Shown here in pieces: positions 10,857 to 64,000 of a stretch of 64,000 nucleotides of DNA. Numbering within the stretch: the stretch's first letter is position 1; every line of letters starts with the position of its first letter. The notes below the pieces were generated by a model. The model did not search any database. It had not been told where the DNA came from and saw nothing but the letters and a program-made list of their open reading frames with translations. Position numbers and translations under genes: made by a program. This DNA comes from Zootoca vivipara. Its lineage: Eukaryota. Where the stretch lies: contig NC_083277.1 in assembly GCF_963506605.1 (NCBI RefSeq), positions 6,572,001 through 6,636,000 of the forward strand, read 5' to 3'.

Positions 10857-11800
10857 TTATATGGGTTCTCCACTGTATGGATTTTTTGGTGGAAATAAAG
10901 GCTGGAGATCTGAAGAAAGCTCTTTGTCCGCACCGAATATCAATTTGTGAGTTCTTCGATGAACATTGCGATGGGAGCTCTGAGTGAAGCCCTTTCCACA
11001 CTCCAGGCATTTATAGGGTTTCTCTCCCGTATGAACGCGTTGATGTGTCGTGAGAGCTGACTTCTCAATGAAGCTTTTTCCGCACTCAGAGCATTTATAG
11101 TTTTTCTCTCCTGTATGAATTCTTTGATGTTTCCTAAGACAATTCTTCTGAGTGTACCTTTTCCCACATTCCGAACATACATGTGGTTTATCCCGGATGT
11201 GCATTTTTTGATGATCAACGAGATCTGCCTCCTGACTGAGGCACTTTCCACATTCCAAGCATTTATATTGTGTCTCTGCAGTGTGTGTTTTCTGGTGGTA
11301 AATTAGACTAGTACGTTGGCTGAAGTTCTTTCCACACTCTAAGCACTTATATGGCTTCTCCCCTGTGTGAATTCTGCGGTGGTAAGTGAGATGGGAGCTT
11401 TGACTGAATCTCTTTCCGCATTGCAGACATTTATACGGTTTCTCCCCGGTGTGAATTCTTTGATGGGAAGTGAGGTTTTTCTTCAAAGTGAAGCTCTTTC
11501 CACATGGTGAGCATTTATACGGTTTCTCACCAGTGTGAATTGCTCGATGGTGCATGAGAGTTATTTTGTGAGTGAAGCTTTTTGCACACTCCAAGCACTG
11601 ATAGGGTTTCTCCCCAGAATGAATTCTTTGATGGGAAGCAAGACTTGTCTTATGCCTTAAGATCTTTCCACACTCCAAACACTGATAGGGTTTCTCCCCT
11701 GTGTGAATTCTTTGATGGTACATGAGAATTATCTTCTGAGCAAAGCTCATTCCACACTCACTGCATTTATATGGTTTCTCTGCGCTGTGGATTCCTTGTG
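10857..11800 (-). CDS. ZNF gene B, terminal exon: 10 C2H2 fingers plus frameshift-derived tail
   Basis: CxxC..H..H repeats with TGEKP linkers; acceptor tgtttcag at 11801 is phase-compatible with the KRAB exon; joined CDS 414+82+83+127+944 = 1650 nt. Confidence 0.9.
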
Positions 11801-12498
11801 CTGAAACAGAGGAAATGTGGAGATGTGTGGGGTTCTTACTAGCTAATACCCTTTTATGTCGTGCCGTCCAGATGTTATTAGACTTTCCCATCAGCTCCAG
11901 CTGGAACAGACAGCTGTCAGGCATGATGAAGGTGGATTCCTGCAACCTCTGGATGGAACCACATTGGCTACCCCAGCCATAAAAAGGTGTGTGTCCCCCC
12001 CAAAAAAACATATTACACTAAGCTGCTACTGACCCTTCCTTTCACCTCATATTTGGAATTAATATAAACAAAGAGAAGGCAAAGGCCTCTCATTTTTATG
12101 GAAATCTGAGATCAGTGAACCCCAGCCTCTTTTGTGAGGTGGATTATTATTTGGCCCATTCATGAAATTCACTCAATTTCTGATGATGTGAACCCGTCTC
12201 TTTGGCCTTCTGGAAAATGACATAGCTCCACTTCCCTCGCAACTCTGAAACTTACATTCCACAAATAACTTAGCCAGATAAGACCAACCAAGCCACAGTT
12301 GTGAAGGGCAGGTCTTGAGAATGCATGGCCAGAGAAATTGCAGGAGAGATTAACTGCAATATTAACTTTCAAGATTAACAGCCGGAATAAAAATCCCAGA
12401 GGCTGCATGTGTTGTGCTATGTCAGAAATATTAAGATTGCTCACATACAGAAATATTGAATTTCAAAAACAACCTTATGACGCAACAGGGGGTCTTAC

Positions 12499-14900: not shown

Positions 14901-15198
14901 ACATCGCATGGAAACAGCAAATGCAAAAACCTTAGCGGTACTGGCTATCTGTTTGGCGGACTTCCACAGAAAGTTGCTGAAGAAGCAGAGAATTCTGGGA
15001 TCGCCTCCCTCACATCCTGAGCCCCTTGGGATTATTTAGCTCAGAGGTAGCTGGCACAATGCTCTCCAAAAGTTGCTGGACTTCAACTCCCATAATTCCC
15101 AGCCAAAATGTAGAATGAATAGGGTTGATGGGAGTTTTAGTTCAACAACCTCTGGAGGAAACCAGGTTGACTTTCCCTGGTCCAGACAAAACTCTCAC

Positions 15199-15612
15199 CT
15201 GCTGCTCTTCCTGCTTCTTGTCCTCTGCCCGGTTCAGGAGGAAACCTTCTGTCAGGGCCACCGCCTGGGAACTGGTCTCTGCTCCGCATTCCCTCACCCA
15301 GTTCTCCATCTCCGGGGGGAGGACAGCCAGGAACTGCTCCAGGATCACCAGGTCCAGGATCTGAGCCTTGGTGTGTGTCTCCGGCTTCAGCCACTGACGG
15401 CAAAGATGGTGGAGTCGGCTGCAAACTTCCCGTGGTCCCTTGGCCTCCTGGTACTGGAAGTGCCTAAACTGTTGGCACTGCAGATCTGAGCTGTGGGTGT
15501 TCTCCCTCAATGTCTTGTGTCTGCTTCCAACCCAAGTTTCCCCAGTGCTCCCAGTCACAATGCTATCAGGCTGTCTTCCTGCTTCGAGGGCGGCAGAGTC
15601 TTGTTCTTCCAT
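15199..15612 (-). CDS. ZNF gene B, SCAN-domain exon (first coding exon)
   Basis: ATG GAA GAA CAA start just after an acceptor, SCAN consensus, donor CAG|GTGAG. Confidence 0.92.
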
Positions 15613-23189: not shown

Positions 23190-25195
23190 TCATATGGGTT
23201 CTCCGCTGTATGGATTTTTTGGTGGGAATAAAGGCTGGAGATCTGAAGAAAGCTGCTCCCATACACTGCCCATCGATGTGTGAGTTCTCTGATGAAGATT
23301 GCGATGGGAGCTCTGAGTGAAGCCCTTTCCACACTCCAGGCATTTATAGGGTTTCTCTCCCGTATGAACACGTTGATGTGTTGTGAGAGTTGACTTCTCA
23401 GTGAAGCTTTTTCCGCACTCAGAACATTTATACTGTTTGTCTCCTGTATGAATTCTTTGGTGTCTGCTGAGACAGTTCTTCAGAGTGTAGCTTTTCCCAC
23501 ATTCCAAGCATACAAATGGTTTCTCCCGGGTGTGCATTTTTTGATGAGCAACGAGATCTGCTTCCTGACTGAGGCACTTTCCACATTCCAAGCATTTATG
23601 TTGTGTCTCTGCAGTGTGTGCTTTCTGGTGGTAAATTACACTAGTGCGGTTCCTGAAGCTCTTTCCACACTCTAAGCATTTATACGGTTTCTCCCCAGTG
23701 TGAATTCTGCGATGGTAAGTGAGATGGTGGCTCTGACTGAAGCTCTTCCCACACTGCAAGCATTTATGGGGTTTCTCCCCCGTGTGAATTCTTTTGTGGG
23801 TAGTGAGATTTATCTTCGCAGCGAAGCTTTTCCCACACTCCGAGCATTTAAAGGGTTTCTCACCAGTGTGAGTTCTTTGATGGTCAGCGAGTCTGTCCTT
23901 GCTGCTTAAGCTCTTCCCACACTGCAAGCATTTATACGGCTTCTCCCCCGTGTGAATTCTTTGATGGGTATTGAGATTCATCTTTAAAGTAAAGCTCTTT
24001 CCACATTCCAAACATTTATATGGCTTTTTGCCCGTGTGAATTGTTTGATGAGAAGAAAGGCTAGAATTGTTTATGAAGCTCTTTCCACATTTCAAGCACT
24101 GATATGGCTTCTCCCCGGTGTGAATTCTCTGATGAACAGAGAGTTGTACCTTCCGACTGAAGCTCTTTCCACACTCAAAACATTTATATGGTGTCTCCCC
24201 TGTGTGGATTCTCTGATGGCGAGTGAGAGGGGAAGACTGACTAAAGCCCTTTCCACACTCTAAGCATTTATATGGTTTCTCCCCTGTATGAATTCTTTTG
24301 TGGGAAGAAAGGGTAGAATTGTGTCTGAAGCTCTTTCCACACTCCAAGCATTTATATGGTTTCTCCCCTGTGTGAATTGTCTGATGATGAGTAAGTTTTG
24401 AACGACTAACGAAGCTCTTTCCACATTCCAAATGTTGATATGATTTCTCTCCGGGATGAATGGTTTGATGCCGAATAAGTTTTGAACTACTAATGAAGCT
24501 CTTTCCACATTCCAAGCATTTGTATTCCTCTGTGTGAATTCTCCGATGAGAAGCTAGGCTAGAATTTTCTCTGAAGCTCTTTCCACATTCCAAGCACCGA
24601 TACGGCTTCTCGCCTGTATGAATTCTTTGGTGAATAGTTAGACGTAACTTCTGAGAGAAGCTCTTTCCGCATTCCAAGCATTTATATGGTTTCCCCCCTT
24701 TGTGAATTATCTGATGAGAAGAAAGGGTAAATTTTTCTCTGAAGCCCTTTCCACATTCCAGACACTGATATGGTTTCTCCCCTGTGTGAATTCTTTGGTG
24801 ATAAACGAGTCTTTGCTTGCTACTGAAGCTCCTTCCGCATTCTAGGCATTTATATTGTTTCTCTCCTGTGTGAATTCTCTGGTGGCAAGAAAGGCTATAA
24901 CTGTCTCTGAAACCCTTTCCACACTCAGAGCATTTATATGGTTGCTCCCCTTTGTAGTTTTTGCAGTAGGATTTACACTGGTGTTTTGAACCAAGAGCTT
25001 CCCATTGAACGAGGCAGTTACCACATTGCTTTCTATCATCGGTTGCATGAAAGCCACTGTCATTTCGAAGCTTATTCCTTTTCTTTTCTGCTTCATTTTT
25101 GCTCCTTTGCTCTTCTCGCTTCCTGCATCTGTCTCGGTCCTGGGTCTCTTTTCCATGTAGTTCTTCCTTACTCTTCCTTTCCGATTCATCACATT
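23190..25195 (-). CDS. ZNF gene C, terminal exon: spacer, 20 C2H2 repeats (one with C to H) and frameshift-derived tail
   Basis: Frame is open from acceptor ttcattgcag (25196) to TGA, longer than the ORF track shows; joined CDS 417+82+80+127+2006 = 2712 nt. Confidence 0.92.
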
Positions 25196-31296: not shown

Positions 31297-31786
31297 CTGA
31301 AACAGCGGTGAGGATTGGAGGACATTGAAGGGGGAGATGTATTAGAAAACAGAATGACACAGGGGAAAACCTGAGCAGTACTTGGAATATTTTCCAGAGA
31401 ACGTTGGTGAATGAAAATAGAGGCTTTTTTGGGGTGCCCTCCCTCCCTTTCTTTTTTTGGAAATAATTTTCATTTGGTTTTACAAATATAAAATCATAAC
31501 AATACAAAATACATATCCATATTTAGAGATTCCTCCGAATCTCTGGACTTCCCACCTTCCCCTCTATAGGCCCTGATGTCAACCTTTTCAACTGCATACT
31601 GTATTAGTAATCCATATTTTAAGTCACTCCATTTTGTCCGTAACATTGCCCTCCATCTCTTTCAGAGGCTGTTGGGACTATCTGGACCAGGAGTAGCCAA
31701 TATTCCCCCTCAACGTTGCTCAGGGGCGAGGAGAGATTTAGTTCAAAAACACCTGAAGGCATCACAAGATCTTGAGATGCTCTCAC

Positions 31787-32203
31787 CTGCTGCTCTTCCT
31801 GCTTCTGGTCCTCTGCCTGACTCAGGAGGAAACCTTCTGCCAGGGCCACCGCCTGGGAACTGGTCTCTGCTCTGCATTCCCTCACCCAGTTCTCTGTCTC
31901 TGGGGGCAGGACAGCCAGGAACTGCTCCAGGACCACCAGGTCCAGGATCTGAGCCTTGGTGTGTCGCTCCGGCTTCAGCCACTGACGGCAAAGGCGGTGG
32001 AGTCGGCTGCAAACCTCTCTGGGTCCTTCGGCCTCCTGGTAGCAGAAATGCCTGAATCTCTGGCGCTGTGCATCTGAGCTGAGGGCGTCCTCTTTACCCA
32101 GGATCCCCTGTGCGTTTCTTTCCCAGAATCCCTCACTGCTCTCGCTTTTGATGGGATCGGTGCCTCTTCCTGTTTCAGCAGCACCCGTCTCTTGCTCTTC
32201 CAT
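31787..32203 (-). CDS. ZNF gene C, SCAN-domain exon
   Basis: MEEQE start, [53 protein letters not shown] motif, donor CAG|GTGAG. Confidence 0.92.
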
Positions 32204-35776: not shown

Positions 35777-36130
35777 TCCTGCTTGGTAGGGGGTTGGACT
35801 GGATGGCCCTTGTGGTCTCTTCCAACTCTATGATTCTATGACTGGAAAGAGAAGTTGCTGAATTGCAACTTATCACCAAGCTCAAAACCATGGAGGGACC
35901 TGGTTTGAACAGAGATATCGGGTTCTTATCTCATTATACATGATAAGCGATCTTCAGCCATCTCAACCCTTGCTTTTTCATGCAAAACCATTTGCAGTCG
36001 TTTGCGGTCATCAACAGCTATCAGTCAGTCAATCACCCATTTCCACCACCCTTCTGAGTGATCCCCCCTCCCCATCCCCACCCCTCCCCACCCCTTCTCT
36101 ACATAAGTGCCTGGAAACTTCCATTTCACT

Positions 36131-36168
36131 GTATCTGAAGAAGTGTGCATGCACACGAAAGCTCATAC
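36131..36168 (+). ncRNA. Minimal type I hammerhead ribozyme motif in 5' pseudo-LTR
   Basis: gtat-CTGAAGA-a-gtgtgc.at.gcacac-GAAA-gc-TC-atac: core boxes, stems I and II, vestigial palindromic stem III (AGCT). Confidence 0.85.
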
Positions 36169-36267
36169 CAAAATAAAAACTTAGTTGGTCTTTAAGGTGC
36201 TACTGAAGGAATTTTTTTATTTTACTTCGATCCAGACCAACACGGCTACCTACCTGTAACCAGAACT

Positions 36268-38973
36268 ATGGAAGGCACCACATTGAGCCGCATGAAATGG
36301 AAGTCCATCAACCTCACCAAGAAACTTGCCCAGGTACAAACTGACATCCTCTTTCTATCTAAATGCAAAAACCTGGACATTGTACCTAAGGGTCTTAGAA
36401 TTAAGAACCCTCTTCAATCAACTTATCCCACAGAATATGCCAGAAAACTATGCCACACTTTATCTAAGAAACTGCTGAAACATCTTATCGGCGTTCTGTA
36501 TTCCAAACAGAAGTTAATAAAGGAGGAACTCTCTGCACTGGAGAACTCCATCAGGAATCACCCGGCCTGGCAGAAGTTCCACAAGGAAAAACAAACCATT
36601 TACCACTCTCAACTGGAGTTACTGAAGAACCAGAAAAATAAAAAACTCTGCAACCTTTCCAACCTACAGGCCACCAATCAAAACAAGATCAACAACATTG
36701 TCAATCTTTCACAGCAAACACTCAGCCCAGCTGAGGAATCCGTCCTTTCACGGGGACTATCATTCTGCCCTGCCAAATCCCAACACATGATTCAGTTCTG
36801 CGGGGACCTGGAAGCATTTTTCCGCCGTTTACGCCTGAAGGAGTATTTTCATCACACACAAGAACAAGACAAAGTAGAACAAACTACATCCCCACAACAC
36901 AACACCTCTCAACTTACTGGGGAACAACCATCACCCTCCAAACGCATCAATGAACAGAACATTGACCACCAACTACCACCGAAAAGAAGTTACACAAAAA
37001 GGGACTCCACATGGACCCCTCCTGATGGACGCAATACCACACTAGATCTGTACATCGAATGCTTCCGCCACAGAATCCAAACGGATGTGACCAGAAAACA
37101 CCATCGCTTACAACAAAATCTAAACCATGCTGAAAGGAGAGCCATAGAAAATCTCAGGAACAACCCAGACATTATAATTAAAGAGGCAGACAAGGGTGGA
37201 GCTGTCGTCATCATGAACAAAACTGATTACATCCAAGAGGCCCACAGACAACTTTCCAATACTGCCTTTTACATGAAATTGGACTCAGACCCCACACAAA
37301 CATACAAAAAAGAACTGAACAAGATTATTAAGGAGCTACCCCTACACATCCAAGAACAGATCCTCACAAACACACCAGCGGAACCTCGGCCAGGAACTTT
37401 CTATCTTCTACCCAAAATACACAAACCAGGAAACCCAGGACGCCCCATCATCTCAGGTATTGGCACCATTACAGTGGGTGTTTCCGGCTATATGGACTCT
37501 GTTCTGAAACCATATGCTATCAGTGCTCCCAGCTACGTACGTGACACCACAGATTTTCTGAGGAAAATACAATATTTGAACAATCTTCCTAACAATACTA
37601 TACTAGCCACTATGGATGTGGAATCTCTATATACCAACATCCCACACAATGATGGTTTACAAGCCATAAGGAACACCATTTCAGATAAAACCACAGCGGA
37701 CTTTGCTACCAAACTCTGCCACTTTGTCCTTACCCACAACCACTTCAAATTTGGTGATGACCTGTTCCTCCAGATCAGCGGCACAGCCATGGGCACCCGC
37801 ATGGCCCCACAGTATGCCAACATCTTCATGGCAGATTTAGAACAACGTTTCCTTAACTCCTACCCACTCAAACCTCTCCTGTACCTGCGATACATTGACG
37901 ATATTTTTATTATCTGGACACATGGACAACAGACCCTGGAAACCTTCCACCAGACATTCAATGACTTTCACCCCACCATCAACCTAACAATGAACCAATC
38001 TATGCAAGAAATACATTTTTTGGACACTACTATAAAAATACAGGATGGACGTATAGACACCACCTTATACAGAAAACCAACTGACCGACAAACATATCTA
38101 CATGCTTCTAGCTACCATCCCAAACATACCAAACAATCCATCGTATACAGCCAGGCCTTACGTTACAACCGCATCTGTTCCAACTCTACAGACAGAGAAT
38201 CTCACCTAAGAGATCTACAGCAAACCTTTTTAGAACTAAAATATCCACCTGATGAAGTTAAACAACAGATCAACAGAGCCAGACAGATACCTAGAGAGAA
38301 CCTGCTGCAAGACAGACCCAAAAAAGAAAATAACAGAACACCACTAGTCATCACATACAGCTCCCAAGCTAAAACAGTACAACGCATCATCAGAGATCTA
38401 CAGCCTCTCCTGGACAATGACCGCTCCCTTTCTCAAGCTCTGGGAGGAAGACCTTTCATTGCCTACAGACAGCCACCCAATCTTAAACAACTCCTCACCC
38501 ACAATAATACAACCACCAGACTTAACATGGACACTGGTACCAGAGCCTGCAATAAACCCAGATGCCAACTTTGCTGCCACATACACCCAGACAACACCAT
38601 TACTGGCCCCAACAACATCCAACATACCATCTCAGGACTATTTAATTGCTCATCCTCTAACATTGTGTATGCCATCAAATGCCAACAGTGCCCTTCAGCT
38701 CTCTATATTGGACAAACAGGCCAAACCCTACGCCAAAGGATAAATGGACATAAATCTGACATCAGGAACCAGAAGACAGAAAAACCAGTAGGAGAACACT
38801 TCAATCTCCCAGGACATTCTATACAAGATCTCAAAGTAGCTGTCTTACTACAAAAGAATTTCAGAAATAGACTGGAAAGAGAAGTTGCTGAATTGCAACT
38901 TATCACCAAGCTCAAAACCATGGAGGGACCTGGTTTGAACAGAGATATCGGGTTCTTATCTCATTATACATGA
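36268..38973 (+). CDS. Penelope-like element ORF: reverse transcriptase + Cys-rich linker + GIY-YIG endonuclease (901 aa)
   Basis: ADKGGAVV, LPKIHK, MDVESLYTNIP, GTAMG, RYIDD; CNKPRCQLC linker; IVYAIKC...LYIGQTG..LRQRINGH endonuclease. Confidence 0.96.
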   Translation: MEGTTLSRMKWKSINLTKKLAQVQTDILFLSKCKNLDIVPKGLRIKNPLQSTYPTEYARKLCHTLSKKLLKHLIGVLYSKQKLIKEELSALENSIRNHPAWQKFHKEKQTIYHSQLELLKNQKNKKLCNLSNLQATNQNKINNIVNLSQQTLSPAEESVLSRGLSFCPAKSQHMIQFCGDLEAFFRRLRLKEYFHHTQEQDKVEQTTSPQHNTSQLTGEQPSPSKRINEQNIDHQLPPKRSYTKRDSTWTPPDGRNTTLDLYIECFRHRIQTDVTRKHHRLQQNLNHAERRAIENLRNNPDIIIKEADKGGAVVIMNKTDYIQEAHRQLSNTAFYMKLDSDPTQTYKKELNKIIKELPLHIQEQILTNTPAEPRPGTFYLLPKIHKPGNPGRPIISGIGTITVGVSGYMDSVLKPYAISAPSYVRDTTDFLRKIQYLNNLPNNTILATMDVESLYTNIPHNDGLQAIRNTISDKTTADFATKLCHFVLTHNHFKFGDDLFLQISGTAMGTRMAPQYANIFMADLEQRFLNSYPLKPLLYLRYIDDIFIIWTHGQQTLETFHQTFNDFHPTINLTMNQSMQEIHFLDTTIKIQDGRIDTTLYRKPTDRQTYLHASSYHPKHTKQSIVYSQALRYNRICSNSTDRESHLRDLQQTFLELKYPPDEVKQQINRARQIPRENLLQDRPKKENNRTPLVITYSSQAKTVQRIIRDLQPLLDNDRSLSQALGGRPFIAYRQPPNLKQLLTHNNTTTRLNMDTGTRACNKPRCQLCCHIHPDNTITGPNNIQHTISGLFNCSSSNIVYAIKCQQCPSALYIGQTGQTLRQRINGHKSDIRNQKTEKPVGEHFNLPGHSIQDLKVAVLLQKNFRNRLEREVAELQLITKLKTMEGPGLNRDIGFLSHYT

Positions 38974-39160
38974 TAAGCGATCTTCAGCCATCTCAACCCT
39001 TGCTTTTTCATGCAAAACCATTTGCAGTCGTTTGCGGTCATCAACAGCTATCAGTCAGTCAATCACCCATTTCCACCACCCTTCTGAGTGATCCCCCCTC
39101 CCCATCCCCACCCCTCCCCACCCCTTCTCTACATAAGTGCCTGGAAACTTCCATTTCACT

Positions 39161-39198
39161 GTATCTGAAGAAGTGTGCATGCACACGAAAGCTCATAC
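39161..39198 (+). ncRNA. Minimal type I hammerhead ribozyme motif in 3' pseudo-LTR
   Basis: Identical to 36131-36168. Confidence 0.85.
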
Positions 39199-41079
39199 CA
39201 AAATAAAAACTTAGTTGGTCTTTAAGGTGCTACTGAAGGAATTTTTTTATTATGATTCTATGATTCCTCCTTTCCGTCCCGCCCCGCTCGTGAGAACGCG
39301 GACGGGAACGAGGTGCTTTATCTCCCCCCCCCCCAGGGGCCCGCCTCTACTCTAACTCCAACTCCTCCTCCCTCTGCATGCATCCGGTTCACTTTAACCC
39401 TTACAGCACCAAACTGTGAAGGGGACCTCCCTCCCTCCTTCTCCCTCTGCACCCCCCCCCGCCCCCGAAAGCAAAAGAGCCAAGGAGGCAATGAATCATG
39501 GAATTGCAGAGCCAGAAGGGACCCCCCAAGGGCATCCAATCCAACCCCCTGCAATTATCTTTAATAATAATAATAATAATAAATTTTATTTATACCCCGC
39601 ACTCCCCAGCCAAAACCGGGCTCAGGGCGGCTAACACTAGATATATAAAACAATTGATTAAGATAGAACTTAAAAACAAGATTAAATACAACATTAAAAT
39701 TAAAATGCAGCCTCATACGAAAAGGGAAAGGGAAAGTGGGGGAGGGGATCAAGTCGGTTCCAGGCCAAAGGCCAGGCAGAACAACTCTGTCTTACAGGCC
39801 CTGCGGAAAGAAATCAGGTCTCACAGGGCCCTGGTCTCATGAGACAGAACGTTCCACCAGGTCGGAGCCAGTGTTGAAAAGGCCCTGGCTCTGGTTGAAG
39901 CTAATCTGACTGCCTTCGGGCCCGGTACCTCTAGGGTGTTGCTATTTATGGACCTTAAGGTCCTCCGTGGGAAATACTAGGAGAGGTGGTCCCGTAAGTA
40001 CGAGGGTCCTAGGGTCTTTTGCCCTAGAATGTGCTATTCTAGGCTGCATCCCCAGAAGTAAGAGCTGACAGTAAGAGCTGTTCAGCAGTGGAATTTGCTA
40101 CCAAGGAGTGTGGTGGAGTCTCCTTCTTTGGAGGTCTTTAAGCAGAGGCTTGACATATGTCAAGAATGCTTTGATGGTGTTTCCTGCTTGGCAGGGGGTT
40201 GGACTGGATGGCCCTTGTGGTCTCTTCCAACTCTATAATTCTATGATTCTAAATACAGTGCCCAGATCAAGGGAAGTCATAGTAACACTCTGTTCTGCCT
40301 TGGTGTGGTGTCCAGTTCTGGGTGCCAAGAGTTTTAAGGATAGAATCACAGAAACTTAAAGTTGGAAGGGACTCCCAAGGGACATCTAGTCCAACCCCTT
40401 GCGATGGAGGAATAACAGCTAAAGCATCCATGAGAGATTGCCACCAAAGCTCCAGGAGGAAACAGGTATTGCACAGAGATGGTGCTCTTCTGAGGCATCA
40501 GACTCCTTGCCTCTTTGTGGGAGAGCCCTGCAAAAATAGTTGGAGGAAGCTGGCAGAGAAGACTCCAAGCTGTTTTAGCACTTTTGTGAATCTTCAGTCC
40601 CCCACCCAGAAATCCCATCATCTCACAGCTCACCAGGACCCATCATTCATGTAACACATGACTCAGCAGAGTTTGATTTCAAATTGTTTTAACATTAACA
40701 TCTTGAAACGTGCCAGCCCAGCCTCTATAGCAGACGAATGTCTTTGAAAGTGGCTTTTTGGCAATAAAGTCCATTGAACGAATTCCATTTTTAACGTTTT
40801 TCTGTGTTGTGAAAATTTTAAAAAAATTAATATTTTCTGGTATTAGCCTGATGCCCATTGTTTGAAAGATGGTTGCATTTTAGGGACTTTCTTCAAGGAA
40901 AAGAAAATATTTTCCTGCTCTTTCGCCCTTTGATGCAATAGGTCGAAGATGCTCTGAATCAGACCGCTGGATCAATGTAGCCTGGCCTCAGTTATCTGTG
41001 CACAGGTGACTGCCTGTATAGACTCACCTGAGCTCTGCAGCTCTCTCCTGATTGAAGTGCAGAGAGAGTGAGGACCAGG

Positions 41080-44308: not shown

Positions 44309-45637
<1,329 letters not shown>

Positions 45638-45849
45638 CTGCAATGAAAAGAGAAACTGATAAGAGCCTGAGGAAGAAATAGAGCAGGCACCCCCAAACTG
45701 CGGCCCTCCAGATGTTTTGGCCTACAACTCCCATGATCCCTAGCTAACAGGACCAGTAGTCGGGGAAGATGGGAATAGTAGTCCAAAACATGTGAAGTTT
45801 GGGGATGCCTGAAATAGAGCCTCAAATCACTGAGGTAAAAGCAAGGATG

Positions 45850-47802: not shown

Positions 47803-48907
47803 CTGGGAGGGAAGGAAAAACATTTCATCCTTATAGATCAGATTATCAACCAGCTACATAAAAAAAGTCTAATTGCTGATCATTATTCTCGTAATTGGAT
47901 GACACCTTCTTGAGAGTTCTCAAGGAGAGAGAACTGTTTAGACTCGGGGAGGGTTTTTTCCGGAAAGAGATAGCATGCAGGACATATGTGGTGGACATGT
48001 GATAAAATTAAAGGCTTCTGGGATATGGTGTACCGGTATGAAGAGCCAACGAAAATGTTCAAGCAAAACTTTGTTAAGAAATCAGAAGCCTTTTTTAATT
48101 GGGGATATTAGACACAGATATAGCCAGAGAAAATAAGAAAATATTCCTTTACGCTACAGGGGCTGCGAGAACAGAACAAAAATTGGAAAAAAGATACAAT
48201 TCTGAAAAAAATGAGTGGCAAGATAAATTATTTGACTATATTGAATTGGCTAGATTGACAGAAGCCATTAGAGGCCAGCCCAAGCAAAAATTTCAAAAAG
48301 AACGGGGGAAATATAGAGAATACCTTAAACAGCAGTGCCCTCAAATTAATACTTGGACTTATTTCAATTAACTTCTGCAAAATAAATTATGGTATAAAAG
48401 CTAAAAACAGAAAGAAAATGGGGTAATAATGAACTAAGGAGGAGACAGTTTACCAAAAATGAAAAGAGAACCGTGTTGAGGATGAAGGAAGTCAATTGGA
48501 AGAAACAAAGAATTGATGCTTTTGAATTATGGTGCTGGAGGAGACTCTTGAGAGTCCCATGGACTGCAAGAAGATCAAACCTATCCATTCTGAAGGAAAT
48601 CAGCCCTGAGTGCTCACTGGAAGGACAGATCGTGAAGCTAAGGCTCCAATACTTTGGCCACCTCATGAGAAGAGAAGACTCCCTGGAAAAGACCCTGATG
48701 TTGGGAAAGATGGAGGGCACAAGGAGAAGGGGACGACAGAGGACGAGATGGGTGGACAGTGTTCTCGAAGCCACCAACATGAGTCTGACCAAACTGTGGG
48801 AGGCAGTGGAAGACAGGAATGCCTGGCGTGCTATGGTCCATGGGGTCACGAAGAGTCGGACACGACTAAACAACAAACAACAATATACACATACATACAC
48901 ATACATA

Positions 48908-49090
48908 GTTACAGGTAGGTAGCCATGTTGGTCTGAGTCGAAGCAAAATAAAAAAATTCCTTCAGTAGCACCTTAAAGACCAACTAAGTTTTTATTTTGG
49001 TATGAAGAAGTGTGCATGCACACGAAAGCTCATACCAAAATAAAAACTTTGTTGGTCTTTAAGGTGCTACTGAAGGAATTTTTTTATTTT
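48908..49090. mobile_element. Short inverted-repeat derivative of the Penelope pseudo-LTR
   Basis: 48908-49003 is the reverse complement of ~36165-36260; 49003-49090 is a forward copy of ~36136-36223; 13-bp TSD atacacatacata. Confidence 0.9.
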
Positions 49091-52000
49091 ATACACATAC
49101 ATATGTATTGTTGACTATTTGATCTGTCTAAGTTTCCGTATGTTACTATGTTTTATTTGTATTTCTGTGTTTTTTTTGTGTAATATTACTTTTATGTTTA
49201 GTTTTATGAGTGTGTGTATGTGTTGTAAAATAAACTTAACAATAATAATAATAATGAGATAGCTTGCCAGGGCTTGCTAGCTCCATCACCTGCTGCGAGA
49301 GGAAAAGGGGACAAGAAGCTCATGCTTGTGTCTCAGAGGCAAATTGAAACACATCCAAATACACGAGGCATAATAAAAAGTTGTATCGGTGGTCTGAGTG
49401 GATAAATAAAACTTTATTGTTTGAAGCTTTAGCCCCCCACAAGGGAGACACAACGAACATACGAGGTCAAGAGGGGATACAATAAACAATCAAAAGTTTA
49501 TTATTGGATCCACACAGGCGTCAAACCTATGTTAACGATAAAAACCTACTTTCCCCTTCAATTAGTCATGGGTTGGTTTTTTAAAAGACAATTTCTGGTG
49601 GTTTTTTAAACAAATACAAAAACGATTAAGCACCTACCCAGGATCCAAGATTCAAACCTATTACTTTTTAGGTAAACCCTCCACTGAGAATATTGAGCAG
49701 TCGGCACAAGATCTCGATTTGGGTCTGGCGAGATGCTCAGACGCGGCTGTATCCCGGATAGGATTGTAATGTTCCCCCCCCCCCCATTATTCAATCTGAA
49801 ATAATTTCTTCCCTGCATCTGAGATCCGCTATAATGCTTCTATCTATGGAAGCTGCATTGCTTTCACAGCTATCAACGCCCCTTTTCAATATGCCTGCCT
49901 GGTATTTCACTAACCTTGTCTATCTTGTCTTCCTTTCTTTCTCCACATCCTATGGATAACATAACACATCTCCATCCACCTACATTCCTATTCAGGTGTC
50001 ACTAACTAGGGTCTGCTACCGTACCCACCTGGGCTTTTCAAGCTCTGCTTTAACCCTGCAAATGCCAAACTCCCCCTTCTCCCAATCCAACAAACGTTTG
50101 GGTGAGCAGTAGTATTCCTAGCAAGAAGCAGTGCCCGGAAAACACCGGAATGGGGGTGGGGAGAGGTCTGAGCCTGCATGGGCTCCTGTCACTCCCTAGC
50201 CTGCACTGTTTCTGACACTTGATGGCACTGGGCCTGATCCTTATACATACCTTTCTCTTCCCAGCTCCCTCCCATTCCAATACACATAAGCAACAATGCC
50301 CCAGAGAGAACCGGTGTGGTGTAGCGGTTAGAATGTTGGACTAGGAGCCGGGAGACCCGGGTTTGAATCCCCGCTCAGCCACGAAGCACACTGGGTGACC
50401 TTGGGCCAGCCACTGCCTTTCCGCCTGGCCTACCTCACAGGGTTGTTGTGAGGAAAGGATACGGAGGGGCAGAAAGGTGGGGTATAAAGGGCGGTGAGGA
50501 CATCACTCCTACGCACCCCTGTTGCCACTGCCTGGCCAGCTAGGGTAGGTTAATCTGCTTTCATTTCCATCTGAACAGTTCATTTCCACCTGGAAGTCTT
50601 GCGTAGTTGAGTCTTTACATCAGTGGCTCTCAAAACTTTCTTCCCTCTGGGGGGCACATTTTCAGTATGAAAATTTCCTCGCGCCACACCAGGCATTTTA
50701 TTGATAAGAAATGCATTGGGGGGGAAGAAAAGAAACAGCTCCTAGGAGTACTTGGTTTCGGCAAGATTTCTTTCTTTCTGTTTGGTGTGGAACAGATGTC
50801 AAAGAGAAAAACAACTACTACCAGACTTTTAGAAGACATCTGATGGCAGCCCTGTTTAGGGAAGCTTTTAATGTTTAATAGATTACAGTATTGTATTTTA
50901 ATATTCTGTTGGAAGCCGCACAGTGGCTGGGGAAACCCAACCAGATGGGCAGGGTATAAATAATAACTGTATTATTATTATTATTATTATTATTATTACT
51001 ACTATTATTACTAAATTTTGTATTGAATTTTCCAAACATTTTCACAATAATCTGCATCTCAGATGATTACATTGTTTCATAAATTGACTTCCCATTTTCA
51101 CCTCCACTGTGTTTTCACTCAAACCTTTTCTGCTGCTGCATTATATATTTATGTATTGCAGAAAGTTTCTCTATTACAGTTAAGGCTTTGAAAAAAATTC
51201 TATCCCTATTCTGCAAATAACATACGGTAAATCATTTCGACACTGTACTATGCTACACTGAAATGTTAAAATGTTTATTTGATCGTTCTTGTTATCTTGC
51301 CATCCTCCACTGACATCCTATCTTGCCATACCCTTTGAGAACCACCCAATTAAAGTTTTGCGTTGTGCCAACACAATGCCAACCTCATCCAGACAAGGAA
51401 GATCTGGGATACCAAGGCATCATCACGTACAATGATTTGGAGAAGAGGGCACTGGAATCAAAGGGTACTTATGAAATTACTCAGGGTTTGTTTTTGTTTT
51501 TTAGCAGGAACGTGGGGAAACTCTGCTCCCTTTCCTTTTGAAAATTAAATAATTATTATCTTTTGTCTGGGAGTGCTTGAACGGATATACCGTATAACCC
51601 AATACCTGAGCCCAAAATCCACCTATATCTGTAATCAATAAAGTTGTCACCACATCCTTGTCTGCTTGAGTTTATTAATCACATCTTACATTTAGTCACT
51701 GGGGGGTGGCAGCACTGCGACTGGACCCATAATAAACAAACAAACAAATAAAAAAGTCCCCGCCCTCTTTCCCCCAGAAAAAAGCACTGGGTACTGGAAT
51801 CAAAAAGTACTTACCAAATGACTATTGTGGATATATTACAGGTGGAACGGTCTCTGTGTTGCTATTTCAACTAGAAACAAGCAAAAATAAAAACTCTTTT
51901 TTTAAAAAAATACATTAAAGTCCCACATCGAATATAACTGATCTGCAGAAAGGACTTTATGATCTGAAAATAGACGGTGTATGTACTTCTGCAAACCAAG

Positions 52001-56884: not shown

Positions 56885-57352
56885 ATGGCTGCTGCTGGGG
56901 GTCGCATCCAGCGTCTCCATGATGAAGCCACGTGCTCCATCTGCCTGGATTACTTCAAGGATCCAGTCATCATCCCAGAGTGTGGGCACAACTTCTGCCA
57001 GTCCTGCCTGATCCAGTACTGGGAGGAATCGGAGGCAGAGGCTTCCTGCCCTCAATGCAGACAAAGAGTCCAGAGAAGGGGTCTCATCCCCAATCGGCAA
57101 CTGGCTAACATGGTAGAAATAGCTCAGAATCTCAGTCTTCAAAAGGGGAGAGAAGGAGGAGGAGGCAAAGGGAGAATGTGCGAAGAGGGAAAGGGAGAAG
57201 GAGGGAAAGGAGGAGTCTGCGAGAAACACCGGGAGCCCCTGAAACTCTTTTGCAAAGTCCACGAAGCCCCCATCTGTGTGGTTTGTGACAAATCAAAGGA
57301 ACATGCAAATCACAAGGTGATTCCTCTGGAGGAGGCTTTCGAGGAATACAAG
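56885..57352 (+). CDS. TRIM E3 ligase (TRIM27/39-like), exon 1: RING + B-box2
   Basis: EATCSICLDYFKDPVIIPECGHNFCQSC...CPQCR RING; CEKHREPLKLFC...ICVVC..SKEHANH B-box; donor AAG|GTAAG. Confidence 0.93.
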
Positions 57353-58969
57353 GTAAGGAGATCCATGGATCTTGAGGAGGGAGAAATAGCTGTGGATTCT
57401 TCCTGAGAGGTTTTATTTTAAATTCTCAGGTCCAAAGTAGGCATGGCATTAATTGGTGGTTCTTTATTACATTAGAAATCTTTCTCTCTGCCAGGGGGAC
57501 AAGGGGATCTTGAAATACAGCAGCTTCAAAGATTTGAATTTGGACCTTGGCAGGGAGAGAAAGGGTTAACCCCACTTTCCCCAGCCAGGCTGCTTTGTAC
57601 GCATTTAGAACTCTGCAAATGTAAATTGCACATACTGTACACAACTAAGTACATGTCTCCTTTGGCTACCAGGATGCCTCCTTAATGCCCTGCAAATGAG
57701 GGATCAGCTGTGGGGGGGAGGGGACTGTTAGCCAGGAATTGACCAGAAGGTGTAGGATCCCCCCCCAAAGTATCTGGTGGAAGCAGATTTGGGAGTGGGG
57801 GTGGAAGCACCTACTGGTGGGGAGCACACTTATTCTGGGGTGTGTGTGTGCTGTGGGGCCTGTGCAATGAGGTTTCAGTGGGGAGGGGGGACTGAGGATC
57901 TCCTTCCAACCCAAATGGCAAAGGACTCAGTGGCTCAGGGTAGCATCTGCAAAGACTAGGGGAAAGATGATTTCCCTTAACAACACAGAATTGGACATGT
58001 ACTATTATATATACTGTATATACCGGTATATATGGGCGCAGGTGGCACTGTGGGTTAAACCACTGAGCCTAGGGCTTGCCAATCAGAAGGTTGGCAGTTC
58101 GAATCCCTGCGAAGGGGTGAGTTCCTGTTGCTCAGTCCCAGCTCCTGCCCACCTAGCAGTTCGAAAGCACATCAAAGTGCAAGTAGATAAATAGGTACCG
58201 CTACAGCGGGAAGGTAAACGGCATTTCCATGTGCTTCTCTGGTTCGCCAGAAGTGGCTTTGTCATGCTGGCCACATGACCTGGAAGCTGTACGCGGGCTC
58301 CCTCGGCCAATAATGCAAGATGAACGCGCAACCCCAGAGTCGGTCACGACTGGACCTAATGGTCAGGGGTCCCTTTACCTTGGAGAAGACAAAGGAGCAA
58401 GCCTTTGCTCGTCTCCAGACTAGTTAGTTGGACTAGAAAACTTTTTCATCACAGTTCCGCAGTGGTTTTCAACCAGTGTGCTGTGAATGGTGCCTCCGGG
58501 GCTGGCCAGGGGGTGTTGGCTGCCAGGAACTGAGGCAGCCTCGAAGTAAGCAAGCAAACTGGTGAGGGACTCTTGCTGTTGGGGATGGACAGACAAGCCC
58601 CAGGCCCCTGTGGGGCAGCGGGGGGGGGGGAGGAACCTCTCTTTGGGGCAGCTCAGAGACCAAGAGGAGGACTCCTAAGGAGAGGGGGGAGGAGAGGAGG
58701 CTGAGAGAGCACTCCGCAAGGGAGGGTGTTTGAGAAAGGGTGAGGGGCTGCCAGCTCTGCAAGTGACCTAACTGGGACCCTGAGCCCCACAGGGGTGCCG
58801 CAGAAACAGGGAGCTGTGGACCCTAAAAGGTTGAAAACCGCTGTACTTTTATTTCCTACAGTAAAATTACTTTGCTATTATAGCAAGGCCACTGGACCCA
58901 AGAAGCCAGTATAATATTCATCTCCACTCTCTGTGTCTGTCAAACCTGAGTTTTCCCTTTTCTCTTTAG

Positions 58970-59065
58970 GGAGAGATCCGTCGCCGCCTGGAGATTCTGA
59001 GGAAAGAGAGAGAGGAAATTATGGCCTTTCAAGCAGATCTGGACAAGGAAAGCAAAGACCTCCTT
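58970..59065 (+). CDS. TRIM exon 2 (coiled coil)
   Basis: 96 bp, AG/GT, GEIRRRLEILRKEREEIMAFQADLDKESKDLL; size typical of this TRIM class. Confidence 0.88.
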
Positions 59066-59930
59066 GTAAGGGTCTCTATTGGTACTAGACAGGGAACAAA
59101 CACTTGAGACCTCCTGGTATAGGGCAGTATATAATTTCAATAAATAATTATAAGAAGAAGAAGAATCGAGTCAGGACTGAGGAGGGATGGGAAAATCTGC
59201 CCATTTCAGCTTCTCCCCATTTCTCCTTTTTCCATATCATTCTGTTTATCAATTTATTATTATGAAAATGAATCACATGTTAGGGTAGCTACCTCCTTGT
59301 ATAAATATTTTGATCTGTACTGTACCCTCATATAAATACATTTTTGTGTGAATATTACCTGGCTGGGTCAAACTTGAAAATACCAGAGGTGTGAATTTCA
59401 AAGCTGTATTTTGGTCTCCATATTTTTTCAGCAATAGTGAATTAGGTAAGTTCACCTTTGAATGCAGCTAAATTGAGTTTCTTTCCCATTGTCGTATATT
59501 ATGTAAATAGCAGTCAAGGAGAAGCCTGAGGACTTGTGAGCTGAAAAGGTGGAAGCAATTCAATCCAAATCCGGATTTACCAGAAAAATTACTAAAGAAT
59601 TGTCTTTCTAAATGTGCACTCTTGTTCATTTTTAGGAAACTCTGGCCATTTTGAACCTTTAAATAAAATAGGGGAGCTATGGGGATGAACCCTGCACTTT
59701 GTCCTCCTCCTCTTCCCCTGTTTCTGTTGCCTTCCTACACCTAAATGGCCCCAGTCTAAACTGAGGGGTCTTTTATGTTCCTGGATGTTCTCTGAACAAC
59801 TTAGAACTCAGGTTATGCCATGCTCCAAAACATGCAGGAAACTCCCGTTTCTAGAAAAAAAAAAGCTCCTTCCACACTCAGACCTCCTCTTTTCTTGCAG
59901 GTAGGTAGCCGTGTTGGTCTTTTCTTGCAG

Positions 59931-60161
59931 AAACTAACAGAAATTGAGAGGCTGAAGGCTGTGGAGAAGTTCAGACAACCGCGCCAGTTCCTGGAAGAAC
60001 AAGAAAAACATCTGCTGACTCATGTGGAAGAGGTGGAGAAGGAGATTGCAGGGAGAAGGGATGAGCAGCTGGCTAAACTCTCCAGGAATCTCTCCTCTCT
60101 TGAAAGGATCATCCAGGAGATGGAGGAAAAGGGTCAGCAGCCAGCGAGTGAACTCCTGCAG
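59931..60161 (+). CDS. TRIM exon 3 (coiled coil); alternative in-frame acceptor at 59901
   Basis: 231 bp, KLTEIERLKAVEKF...EMEEKGQQPASELLQ, donor CAG|GTAAG. Confidence 0.9.
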
Positions 60162-61133
60162 GTAAGACGGTGGCAGGAACAGCACAAGGCTCCAGGAAAA
60201 GGCTGCCTCCAATCCTTTCTGTGCCCCTTTCATGTATGCAAGGAGTGCAGGGGCTCAGTTGATAGAGCCTCTAGTAAGGTTTGTAATGGACAGGAAGACC
60301 CAAGAGACCTAGGATGCTTAACTCATCTGAATGCAGACGAGAGATTCTTCTGTGTCCTTGATGGAACGGGAGGTGATTTTCTGCTCTTTGCTGATGATTT
60401 GTCTCTGAATGCCTTCCCACTGGGCAATGCTGCCTTCCTGCCCTCTGCTGGGCTTCGCCAAAGATGCATTCTGGTCTCCTTCCAACATGAGCCAGTCTCT
60501 TGACCAAGCTTCTCTTCCCGTTCCCTCCACGACTTCTGGGTTGATCCCCTTCCCCGTGGACACAGATCAGCCCAAAATGGTGCTCAGTCATAGTGACCAA
60601 AGAGCAAGACAGAGGGACTCATCCAGACTGATATTTGCTTTGATGTTGCAATAAGGAGCAAGTTTTTCCTGAGGGAAAGTGGCAGGACAAAGGCAAAACC
60701 ACTTGGACCCGTGTTTTCTGGGCAATGGAAAAGCAGAAGTGTGGTTGAGCGCAAAGAAACACTGAGCTGTTTTATTACCCCTTTGGAGGCATTTTATGCT
60801 GCATGTCCTTTTTTTCATTTCCAGTTGGAAAGTAGAATTTAAAATTTGGGGACTTCTGTGGAAGACAATTTGGGACAGTGCCCTGGCAGGATTATGCTGT
60901 AGGCTTACTTACATCTCAATTGCACAATGCAAACGGGGGTAAAGTTAATAAATTATAATATAAGAGATGGGGTGGAATCTTTTCTTGAACCCACAAACAT
61001 GAAGTTTCCCTAAAATGCTGGTGGATTTTCATAAGGATTTTTTTTTTAAAAAAATTGCAAACAGATGTGGAAATGTGGAGAACTTGATACAGTATTGGAA
61101 AAGTTAATAATTCCCTTCTCTTTTCTCCTCTAG

Positions 61134-61156
61134 GATGTGAGAAGCACCTTGCAGAG
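61134..61156 (+). CDS. TRIM exon 4
   Basis: 23-bp exon DVRSTLQ(R) with polypyrimidine acceptor and GTAAGT donor. Confidence 0.85.
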
Positions 61157-62054: not shown

Positions 62055-62170
62055 GTATGAGAAAAGAGCGAGTCCAGAGAAGCCAGTGGCTTTTCCTGCA
62101 GAACTGAGGAACCAGTTGGAATCCTGCGTTCTAAATCACCTTGTGGAGGATGCAATGAAACAATGGAAAG
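62055..62170 (+). CDS. TRIM exon 5 (PRY-SPRY exon expected beyond the window)
   Basis: 116 bp, YEKRASPEKPVAFPAELRNQL...AMKQWK, CAGCAG acceptor, GTAATG donor. Confidence 0.82.
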
Positions 62171-63936: not shown

Positions 63937-64000
63937 TTTGTAAGCTTGCTTTATGATTGCTGAGTTTTAAGGCTTTAGTTATTTTTATAGATTGTTCCTA

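What the first reader, a model, noticed from the sequence alone, without database searches (positions are those of the whole stretch)
59888..59930. 17-nt Penelope insertion duplicated the TRIM exon-3 splice acceptor in frame
Seen: tcttttcttgcag occurs twice (59888-59900, 59918-59930) around gtaggtagccgtgttgg. Positions 59898-59920 are the exact reverse complement of Penelope bases ~36234-36256. Net gain is 30 nt with no stop. The upstream AG would add VGSRVGLFLQ to the coiled coil; the downstream AG restores the 231-bp exon. The junction reads CAG|GTAGGT, an acceptor directly followed by a donor-like site, so the insert looks like a GT..AG proto-intron or recursive splice point. Inference: an aborted reverse-transcription event created tandem acceptors, a possible route to new splice isoforms that repeat maskers would miss.
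Basis: partly seen in the sequence, partly recalled or inferred. Interest (0 to 1): 0.76.

Follow-up and report, generated by a model that had tools for sequence, protein, structure and literature searches.

The report
Tiny Penelope insertion doubles TRIM acceptor
A 17-base scrap of a still-active lizard Penelope-type jumping gene landed on the splice acceptor of a TRIM gene exon and duplicated that acceptor, a neat but ordinary footprint of a failed insertion whose effect on the gene's RNA could not be measured here.

Summary
TCTTTTCTTGCAG stands at 59888-59900 and 59918-59930 around 17 nt, and 59898-59920 is the exact reverse complement of 36234-36256. The 30 extra bases are in frame without a stop, just before the 231-bp coiled-coil exon of an RFP-like TRIM gene.

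The scrap comes from a specific place. It lies wholly inside the 39-nt "tail" (36222-36260) of a young Penelope-like element. The tail is the stretch where this class of element starts reverse transcription (PMC11167929). The 13-nt duplication equals that of another copy in the window. Three bases of microhomology sit at each junction.

My best reading is a dead-end, tail-only insertion by target-primed reverse transcription.

The splicing part is untested. In two RNA runs I saw 19 junction reads 59065>59931 and no listed junction to 59901. However, nearly all reads on the exon carry paralogue letters, so they say nothing about this copy. The first-AG rule predicts use of the upstream AG or exon skipping. 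A 30-nt "proto-intron" is implausible.

An empty allele or orthologue was not shown.

This is a known kind of event and a tidy example. The scan noted similar short Penelope insertions elsewhere in this genome.

The parts
59888..59900 (+). Target-site duplication, left copy. It is the upstream splice acceptor (polypyrimidine tract plus CAG), the first AG after the ancestral branch region.
   Evidence: In positions -20..-4, 14 of 17 are pyrimidines.
59901..59917 (-). 17-nt insert. It is the sense strand of the Penelope-like element's tail, lying on the minus strand and so antisense to the TRIM gene.
   Evidence: 17 of 17 identical to 36237-36253.
59918..59930 (+). Target-site duplication, right copy. 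It is the downstream acceptor that restores the 231-bp exon.
   Evidence: In positions -20..-4, 12 of 17 are pyrimidines. The junction 59065>59931 is seen in RNA reads, mostly from paralogues.
59898..59920 (-). Full 23-nt exact match to the element: the insert plus 3 nt of microhomology on each side (AGA and CTG on the element's strand).
   Evidence: 23 of 23. Letter-by-letter comparison.
59931..60161 (+). TRIM coding exon 3 (231 nt, phase 0, coiled coil).
   Evidence: 84-89% identical to exon 3 of lacertid RFP-like TRIMs (P0001, P0006, P0013, P0015).
58970..59065 (+). TRIM coding exon 2 (96 nt, phase 0). Its donor is at 59066.
56885..57353 (+). TRIM coding exon 1 (RING and B-box).
   Evidence: Pfam: zf-C3HC4_4 8.8e-13 and zf-B_box 2.6e-11.
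61134..61156 (+). TRIM exon 4 (23 nt, DVRSTLQR).
   Evidence: The RNA loose end behind 60162 reads exactly this exon and then the start of exon 5.
62055..62170 (+). TRIM exon 5 (116 nt).
35842..39251 (+). Young intact Penelope-like element (copy A). It has a partial upstream unit plus a full unit with a 901-aa ORF (36268-38973). It is flanked by atgattctatga (35830-35841 and 39252-39263). Its 3' end has no tail.
   Evidence: 35840-36221 = 38870-39251, 382 of 382 identical. Pfam: RVT_1 3.7e-12 and GIY-YIG 6.6e-05.
36222..36260 (+). The 39-nt 'tail' of the family. It is present after the proximal end point (36221) in copy B and absent at the 3' end of copy A. The 23-mer is tail positions 13-35.
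   Evidence: Concept of the tail from PMC11167929, PMC8557442 and PMC3846280.
48908..49090 (-). Two-armed Penelope-like stub (copy B). It has an inverted arm ending at about 36223-36224 and a direct arm with the complete tail ending ...ctgtaac. It is flanked by tatgtatgtgtat (13 nt) in a TG/TA-rich context.

Best explanation
A young, probably still active Penelope-like retrotransposon (PLE) made a dead-end micro-insertion at the acceptor of TRIM exon 3. The family is present intact 23 kb upstream, with an RT and GIY-YIG ORF.

Inferred steps:
1. The element's endonuclease cut the two strands 13 nt apart. The + strand was cut after ...TTGCAG and the - strand at the left edge of the 13-mer.
2. 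The + strand 3' end (...CAG) paired with CUG in the AC-rich tail of the element's RNA and primed reverse transcription there. This is the zone where PLE reverse transcriptase normally starts.
3. After only 17-20 nt the cDNA left its template. It was joined through TCT/AGA microhomology to the other 13-nt overhang.
4. Fill-in synthesis produced the 13-nt target-site duplication.

Because the 13-mer is the polypyrimidine tract plus CAG, the acceptor now exists twice, 30 nt apart and in frame. The antisense tail places GTAGGT directly after the first AG.

What is shown: the origin of the 17-23 nt, the duplication, the frame, and the position inside the tail.

What is inferred: the order of events, and that the endonuclease made the cut.

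What is not measured: the consequence for RNA. From the first-AG rule I expect this copy to use the upstream AG (adding VGSRVGLFLQ to the coiled coil) or to skip the exon in part of its transcripts.
For: - The match to the PLE is exact over 23 nt and the 17-mer occurs nowhere else in the window.
- The source family has an RT plus GIY-YIG ORF of 901 aa. It is very young, with 382 of 382 identical between its two repeated ends.
- The match lies within 36222-36260. That stretch is present at the end of copy B and absent at the end of copy A, so it is the optional tail.
- PMC11167929 (main text read): PLE RT starts at two adjacent internal sites, at several positions in an AC-rich region. The tail is the stretch between the start sites. 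Both DNA strands are cut and extended.
- The duplication is 13 nt, as in copy B (13 nt). Copy A has 10-12 nt.
- Three extra matching bases sit at each junction. The chance of both is about 1 in 4096 by my arithmetic. Microhomology-mediated 5' joining is described for PLEs (PMC3846280, passages).
- One contig each in X2 and X13 runs up to 59900 and then continues AAATTAACAGAAA, which is 12 of 13 identical to the start of exon 3. So copies with a single acceptor directly on the exon exist.
- 7 of 7 fetched lacertid relatives read ...KDLL|(K/E)LTE... without the 10 aa.
Against: - The insert stops 4-7 nt short of the distal tail end seen in copy B (...ctgtaac, equal to 36260). So it does not contain the family's usual terminus. 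I could not measure how widely start sites scatter in this family.
- PMC11167929 stresses that the start site is not homologous to the cut DNA, whereas I invoke 3-nt pairing.
- The cut sites here (GCAG|AAAC) are not the AT-rich ATT motif preferred in vitro by the Anolis element.
- No exact contig bridging 59889-59920 was among the pieces shown for X2, and no empty allele or orthologue of this very locus was seen. The single-acceptor contigs are most likely paralogues.
- The tail RNA shows no significant fold (z -0.74).
Confidence: 0.7

Rival explanations
1. Endonuclease-independent filler. A chromosomal break at the acceptor was repaired by end joining that copied or captured about 20 nt of abundant PLE RNA, cDNA or DNA, using 3-nt microhomologies. 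The element's own integration machinery played no part.
For: 3-nt microhomology at both junctions. The insert lacks the family's usual terminus. PLE tail sequence is extremely abundant in the reads: bin 59870-59920 reaches depth 22921 in X2 and 6808 in X13, against roughly 300-2200 in neighbouring bins.
Against: A clean 13-nt duplication needs a staggered cut of the size that this family makes (13 nt in copy B, 10-12 in copy A). The scrap comes from the RT start zone and not from a random part of a 3-kb element (PMC11167929).
Confidence: 0.13
2. Remnant of a longer PLE insertion. A normal truncated copy with a tail inserted with a 13-nt duplication, and was later trimmed on both sides by two microhomology-mediated deletions (AGA...AGA and CTG...CTG).
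For: Microhomology-mediated deletions disable many PLE copies in another host (PMC3846280, passages). The 3-nt repeats are at the right places.
Against: It needs three events instead of one. Both deletions would have to stop exactly at the duplication borders. The duplications are 13 of 13 identical and the insert 23 of 23 identical to a very young copy, leaving little time.
Confidence: 0.08
3. Assembly or polishing artefact: the 30 nt do not exist in the animal.
For: No exact contig spanning 59889-59920 was among the X2 pieces shown. The exact X2 contigs listed end at 59889 and start at 59920.
Against: The structure (element scrap, perfect duplication, microhomologies) is that of a biological insertion and not of a collapse or mis-join. 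X2 is a low-coverage run with contigs of about 100-180 nt, and 1600 further pieces were not shown. No 30-nt 'left out' row and no joint 59900>59931 was reported in any of the 4 runs.
Confidence: 0.04
4. Chance resemblance between an intronic sequence and the element.
For: A scan of the metagenome collection found 68 exact copies of the 17-mer, so a 17-mer alone can recur by chance in very large data.
Against: In the 64-kb window the expectation is 0.00. Here the match runs 23 nt and sits between perfect 13-nt repeats. None of the 68 metagenome hits extends by more than 3 nt on a side, and their flanks are 3-9 of 20 identical.
Confidence: 0.01

Closest known systems
5'-truncated and 'tailed' insertions of endonuclease-bearing Penelope-like elements (Penelope/Poseidon/Neptune type; PMC8557442, PMC3846280, PMC11167929)
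   Same: Same element family as an intact RT plus GIY-YIG copy in the window. It has a short target-site duplication of the family's size. The sequence comes from the optional 30-40-bp tail where RT starts. It has microhomology at the junction.
   Different: Only 17-23 nt, with no pLTR, no hammerhead and no second arm. It stops 4-7 nt before the usual distal tail end. My 2 of 6 completed paper searches on PLEs listed no tail-only scrap of this size. That is no proof that none is in print.
Very short LINE-1-mediated retrocopies (short mRNA pseudogenes of 300 bp or less with TSDs; PMC2831318, abstract read)
   Same: Dead-end products of target-primed reverse transcription that stop early, recognised by their target-site duplications.
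   Different: Those carry a poly-A tract and are made by L1. This one has no poly-A and starts inside the template RNA, as PLEs do.
Retroelement insertions into 3' splice sites (Alu into the AG or polypyrimidine tract of NF1 acceptors; PMC3219598, passages read)
   Same: Insertion with TSD right at an acceptor.
   Different: There, elements of about 300 bp disrupt the site, and skipping of the downstream exon was observed (4 of 14 Alu insertions lay in 3' splice sites). Here the insert is so short that the duplication rebuilds a complete second acceptor 30 nt downstream and the reading frame is kept.
New AG dinucleotides in the AG-exclusion zone and tandem acceptors (PMC7317903, passages read)
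   Same: Seen from the downstream site, the insertion puts three AGs (59900, 59904, 59908) between the branch region and the exon's AG.
   Different: Those are point mutations with measured RNA effects: the new AG alone was used in 25 of 49 cases, with exon skipping or cryptic sites in the others. Here the effect is unmeasured.
Recursive splicing and RS-exons (PMC6224609, listing and start of abstract only)
   Same: If the upstream AG is used, exon 3 would begin with GTAGGT. Its ligation to exon 2 would recreate a 5' splice-site-like sequence, which is the defining layout of an RS-exon.
   Different: There is no RNA evidence. Re-splicing to 59931 would need a 30-nt intron (implausible, recalled). 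Re-splicing to exon 4 would skip exon 3 and was not tested, because 61134 lay outside the stretch I laid.

Membership tests
Insertion of an endonuclease-bearing Penelope-like element | Sequence derived from a PLE that encodes RT and a GIY-YIG endonuclease | tested here: met
   23 of 23 identical to 36234-36256. The 901-aa ORF carries RVT_1 and GIY-YIG.
Insertion of an endonuclease-bearing Penelope-like element | Flanking target-site duplication of the family's usual length | tested here: met
   13 nt, perfect. Copy B has 13 nt and copy A 10-12 nt.
Insertion of an endonuclease-bearing Penelope-like element | The insert carries the element's 3' terminus (one of the two RT start points) | tested here: inconclusive
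   It lies inside the tail but ends at 36253-36256. That is 4-7 nt before the distal end seen in the single tailed copy of the window (36260). The scatter of start sites in this family was not measurable with one read-laying run. Fig. S1B and S2 of PMC11167929 are supplements and were not seen.
Insertion of an endonuclease-bearing Penelope-like element | pLTR with a hammerhead motif, tandem or inverted arms | tested here: not met
   Only 17-23 nt are present, with no pLTR or hammerhead part. Rfam gave no hammerhead hit even on the parent copy. The motif there is read by eye only.
Insertion of an endonuclease-bearing Penelope-like element | Empty site in an allele, orthologue or paralogue | tested here: inconclusive
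   One contig each in X2 and X13 joins ...CAG directly to AAATTAACAGAAA.
Tandem alternative 3' splice sites in use | Two competent acceptors a short, in-frame distance apart | tested here: met
   The last 13 intron bases are identical. The sites are 30 nt apart with no stop between them.
Tandem alternative 3' splice sites in use | Both junctions present in RNA of this gene | tested here: inconclusive
   Only 59065>59931 was listed (11 reads in X21, 8 in X22). No joint to 59901 reached the threshold of 3 reads. The reads are nearly all from paralogues: reads 99% or more alike number 2 of 113 and 15 of 254.
Recursive splice site / RS-exon | Acceptor AG directly followed by a GT donor-like sequence | tested here: met
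   CAG|GTAGGT matches 8 of 9 positions of the recalled consensus CAG|GTAAGT.
Recursive splice site / RS-exon | Stepwise splicing seen in RNA (junction to the site, then re-splicing) | tested here: not met
   No joint 59065>59901 was listed in either RNA run, with the caveat that this copy seems not to be expressed there.
Class-IV (RFP-like) TRIM gene | RING, B-box and coiled coil encoded by exon 1 plus the 96- and 231-nt exons | tested here: met
   Pfam RING and B-box in exon 1. Exons 2-5 align to lacertid RFP-like TRIMs.
Class-IV (RFP-like) TRIM gene | C-terminal PRY/SPRY (B30.2) exon | tested here: inconclusive
   tblastn with SPRY-bearing relatives (P0009, P0013, P0015, P0041) found no SPRY part in the window. 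It may lie beyond base 64000.

The most novel reading that the evidence does not exclude
Tail-only micro-insertions may be a recurrent, repeat-masker-invisible mutation class of active Penelope-like elements. Each would be an in-vivo footprint of internal RT initiation followed by immediate template loss. Each would plant the antisense tail motif CAG|GTAGGT next to a duplicated piece of the target. In this TRIM copy the event would then have created a working pair of in-frame acceptors, or turned a constitutive coiled-coil exon into an RS-exon that is partly skipped. That would be a one-step route to new isoforms in a fast-evolving immune gene family. An earlier first-reader note (s1-848610, unchecked) describes a 34-bp Penelope insertion that offers a splice donor elsewhere in this genome. 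That fits recurrence.
Probability: 0.15. Interest if true: 0.55.

Novelty: new member of a known kind. Interest (0 to 1): 0.3.

Why it matters
The locus is a clean natural example of three things.
- A Penelope-like element can leave a scar of only 17 nt plus its target duplication.
- The scar comes from the tail, where in-vitro work (PMC11167929) places the start of reverse transcription. It is therefore a small piece of in-vivo support for internal initiation.
- A target-site duplication alone can rebuild a complete splice acceptor.

If such scars are common, they are a hidden source of splice-site variation in genomes with active PLEs. The event class (truncated retroelement insertion at a splice site) is well known, and no effect on this gene's RNA was shown.

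Tried and rejected
1. RNA test of acceptor use. It gave 19 reads for 59065>59931 and none listed for 59065>59901. I reject it as a test of this copy. On exon 3 almost every read differs from the window: 59958 G>A in 24 of 24 (X21) and 23 of 23 (X22) reads, and 59980 C>T in 25 of 25 and 38 of 38. Only 2 of 113 and 15 of 254 laid reads are 99% or more alike. About 6 in 100 of each run was read.

2. Independent DNA confirmation and empty site. X2 and X13 are low-coverage contig sets dominated by paralogues. No bridging exact contig and no 30-nt deletion row was shown. Only 16 of about 1616 pieces were listed.

No tool here holds lizard genomes.

4. Protein searches for a product containing VGSRVGLFLQ or an intron read-through across an empty site.
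- One search gave 48 hits among 357 candidates, with coverage at most 61%.
- One search gave 7 hits among 18 candidates, with coverage at most 69%.
- Neither found a hit covering that part. Full-length TRIMs of about 480 aa were outside the length range of my queries, so this is not evidence of absence.

5. Metagenome scan for more PLE copies to define the tail end. It gave 68 exact 17-mer hits, all chance.

6. Rfam on the parent copy. There was no hammerhead hit. The only match, ZEB2_AS1_3 at E 0.46, is chance.

7. Fold of the tail RNA. No significant stem-loop was found (z -0.74), so I do not claim the AC-rich stem loop of the Anolis element for this family.

8. Tandem duplication as the origin. 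I rejected it because the 17 nt after the second 13-mer are unlike the insert.

9. My own first mis-count of the exon phase, which suggested a TAG stop in the extension, was corrected.

10. I did not build, search or fold a joined (spliced) protein model. The exons were searched apart and the joined step was left out.

11. Supplements were not opened. Fig. S1B and S2 and Table S1 of PMC11167929 may bear on how far RT start sites scatter.

Full report
**Observation.** This pair is the only direct repeat of 10 nt or more in 59700-60100. It is the only occurrence of the 13-mer in the window with up to one mismatch. The 17-mer occurs, with up to 2 mismatches, at three places only, and the other two are in Penelope-like copies. 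The expected count is 0.00 in 100 shuffles. blastn extends the match to 23 of 23 bases, 59920-59898 against 36234-36256. Translation of 59901-60161 gives VGSRVGLFLQ followed by the exon's KLTEIERL...ELLQ without a stop. I briefly mis-set the phase by one base.

**The gene.**
- 56885-57353 encodes a RING and a B-box (Pfam).
- 58970-59065 (96 nt), 59931-60161 (231 nt), 61134-61156 (23 nt) and 62055-62170 (116 nt) follow, all with canonical splice signals.
- These exons align exon by exon to RFP-like TRIM proteins of lacertid lizards. The best relative is 86% identical.
- No SPRY part lies in the window.
- The copy is open through exon 5. It has 14 extra residues between the RING and the B-box, and a proline in the coiled coil where relatives have leucine.
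- All 7 of 7 relatives that I fetched read ...KDLL|(K/E)LTE... at the exon 2/3 junction, without ten extra residues.

**The source element.**
- Copy A (35842-39251) is a partial unit followed by a full unit, with a 901-aa ORF that carries RVT_1 and GIY-YIG.
- Its two repeated ends are 382 of 382 identical. It is flanked by atgattctatga.
- Its 3' end falls at the equivalent of 36221.
- Copy B (49090-48908, minus strand) is a two-armed stub. Its direct arm runs on to the equivalent of 36260 (...ctgtaac). It is flanked by a 13-nt repeat.
- The 39 nt at 36222-36260 are therefore the optional "tail" of this family. The literature describes a 30-40-bp extension often found at one end of PLE insertions (PMC8557442 and PMC3846280, passages read).
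- The tail was recently explained by reverse transcription starting at two adjacent internal sites of the RNA, at several positions in an AC-rich region, with both DNA strands cut and extended (PMC11167929, abstract and whole main text read).
- The 23-mer at the TRIM acceptor is tail positions 13-35. So the scrap comes from the zone where this kind of element starts copying, not from an arbitrary place.

**Mechanism (inferred).**
- On the element's strand the locus reads ctgcaagaaaaga | ccaacacggctacctac | ctgcaagaaaaga. The element reads ...cc aga ccaacacggctacctac ctg taac....
- The last three bases of the left repeat and the first three of the right repeat also match the element. By chance that would happen about once in 4096 (my arithmetic).
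- This fits the following sequence of events. The strands were cut with a 13-nt stagger. The + strand end ...CAG paired with CUG in the tail and primed cDNA. The cDNA left the template after 17-20 nt. It annealed through TCT/AGA to the other overhang. Fill-in made the duplication.
- The same duplication length in copy B supports the element's own endonuclease.

**Points against this reading.**
- The scrap ends 4-7 nt before the distal tail end of the one tailed copy available.
- The cut sites are not the AT-rich motif of the Anolis enzyme.
- The published work stresses the absence of homology at the start site.
- Rivals are break repair with PLE filler, a trimmed longer insertion, and an assembly error. 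I rate them at 0.13, 0.08 and 0.04.

**Reads.** One read-laying run was available. It covered 58850-60350 with two raw RNA runs of the same organism label (X21, X22, about 6 in 100 of each read), one contig set of the same organism (X2) and one of a related organism (X13). The likeness threshold was 90.
- The joint 59065>59931 (GT..AG) has 11 reads (8 starts) in X21 and 8 reads (4 starts) in X22. A one-base-offset version has 1 and 4 reads.
- No joint to 59901 is listed; the listing threshold is 3 reads.
- This does not test the copy in the window. At 59958, 24 of 24 and 23 of 23 reads differ from it. At 59980, 25 of 25 and 38 of 38 differ. Only 2 of 113 and 15 of 254 laid reads are 99% or more alike.
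- The loose ends behind 59065 read a paralogue's exon 3 start.
- The reads therefore come from paralogues, and this copy is not detectably expressed in these samples.
- On the DNA side, one contig in X2 and one in X13 run to 59900 and go on AAATTAACAGAAA, which is 12 of 13 identical to the exon start. That is an acceptor without the 30 nt. In X13 a contig starting to fit at 59869 has 53 unlike letters before it, so this is most likely a paralogue.
- No exact contig across the insert, no 30-nt deletion and no 59900>59931 joint was shown. Most pieces were not listed.
- The bin holding the insert has depth 22921 (X2) and 6808 (X13). So the tail sequence is very abundant in both organisms.

**Expected consequence.**
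- Both acceptors share their last 13 intron bases. The upstream one has the better pyrimidine tract (14 against 12 of 17) and a G as first exon base. It is the first AG after the only branch-like A found (59880, 20 nt upstream).
- Two further TAGs lie at 59904 and 59908.
- Spliceosomes strongly prefer the first AG after the branch point. New AGs in the AG-exclusion zone are either used or cause exon skipping (PMC7317903, passages read).
- I therefore expect this copy, when expressed, to use 59900 and add ten residues (two of them glycines) to the coiled coil, or to skip the exon in part.
- Removing the 30 nt as an intron is implausible because of its size (recalled knowledge).
- The GTAGGT at the start of the extended exon would recreate a donor-like site after ligation to exon 2. 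That is the layout of an RS-exon (PMC6224609, listing and start of abstract only). Re-splicing to exon 4 would skip exon 3. That junction lay outside the stretch I laid.

**Comparison and verdict.** The event belongs to known kinds: truncated PLE insertion, very short retrocopies (PMC2831318, abstract), and retroelements hitting 3' splice sites (PMC3219598, passages). Four features are particular to it.
- The size is extremely small.
- The origin lies inside the tail.
- There is microhomology on both sides.
- The duplication rebuilds a full acceptor in frame.

The 2 of my 6 completed paper searches that dealt with PLEs listed no description of tail-only PLE scraps. That is weak evidence of absence. 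Earlier notes of this scan describe other short Penelope stubs in this genome, including an unchecked 34-bp one that offers a splice donor. So the scan has met the kind before on other DNA. I score it as a real, well-explained, modestly interesting example.

Noticed in passing
window 60162-60338 (and on to the stop at about 60503): The intron after exon 3 stays open in frame (VRRWQEQHKAPGKGCLQSF...LTHLNAD). The same read-through tail is annotated as the C-terminus of 310-311-aa RFP-like proteins in two other lacertids (P0001, P0002; 86% identical over 138 aa). A conserved short, SPRY-less isoform by intron retention seems possible.
   Followed up: partly
window 57140-57220 (exon 1): This TRIM copy has 14 extra residues (KGREGGGGKGRMCE...) in the glycine/lysine-rich linker between the RING and the B-box compared with all 6 relatives aligned over exon 1. 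TRF finds a loose 9-nt repeat at 57185-57213.
   Followed up: partly
window 59975-59985 (exon 3): The coiled coil reads RQPRQF where relatives read RELRQF/RELHQF/RQLRQF. A proline in the helix, the linker expansion and the lack of matching RNA reads together may mean that this copy is drifting towards a pseudogene.
   Followed up: no
window 59105-59155: A roughly 50-nt stretch in intron 2 has contig depth of about 100000 in both DNA sets, so it is part of an extremely abundant repeat. I did not identify it.
   Followed up: no
window 58020-58400: A tRNA-like SINE-looking element (gggcgcaggtggc...ggttcgaatccc...) lies in intron 1 of the TRIM gene. It was read by eye only.
   Followed up: no
window 48895-49103: Copy B is a two-armed Penelope stub. 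Its inverted arm ends at the proximal RT start point and its direct arm carries the whole tail, inside one 13-nt duplication in TG/TA-rich DNA.
   Followed up: partly
window 36126-36170: A minimal hammerhead-like motif (CTGAAGA, a 14-nt perfect palindrome GTGTGCATGCACAC, GAAAGCTC) lies in the pLTR of copy A. Rfam does not score it. It was read by eye.
   Followed up: partly
window 10857-12011, 23190-24677, 44388-45734 (minus strand): Three long C2H2 zinc-finger ORFs (384, 495 and 448 aa), with SCAN-like ORFs nearby (for example 4267-4704, 15142-15612, 31619-32203). The TRIM gene sits next to a KRAB/SCAN-type ZNF cluster.
   Followed up: no
window 7984-8131: A run of 148 N.
   Followed up: no
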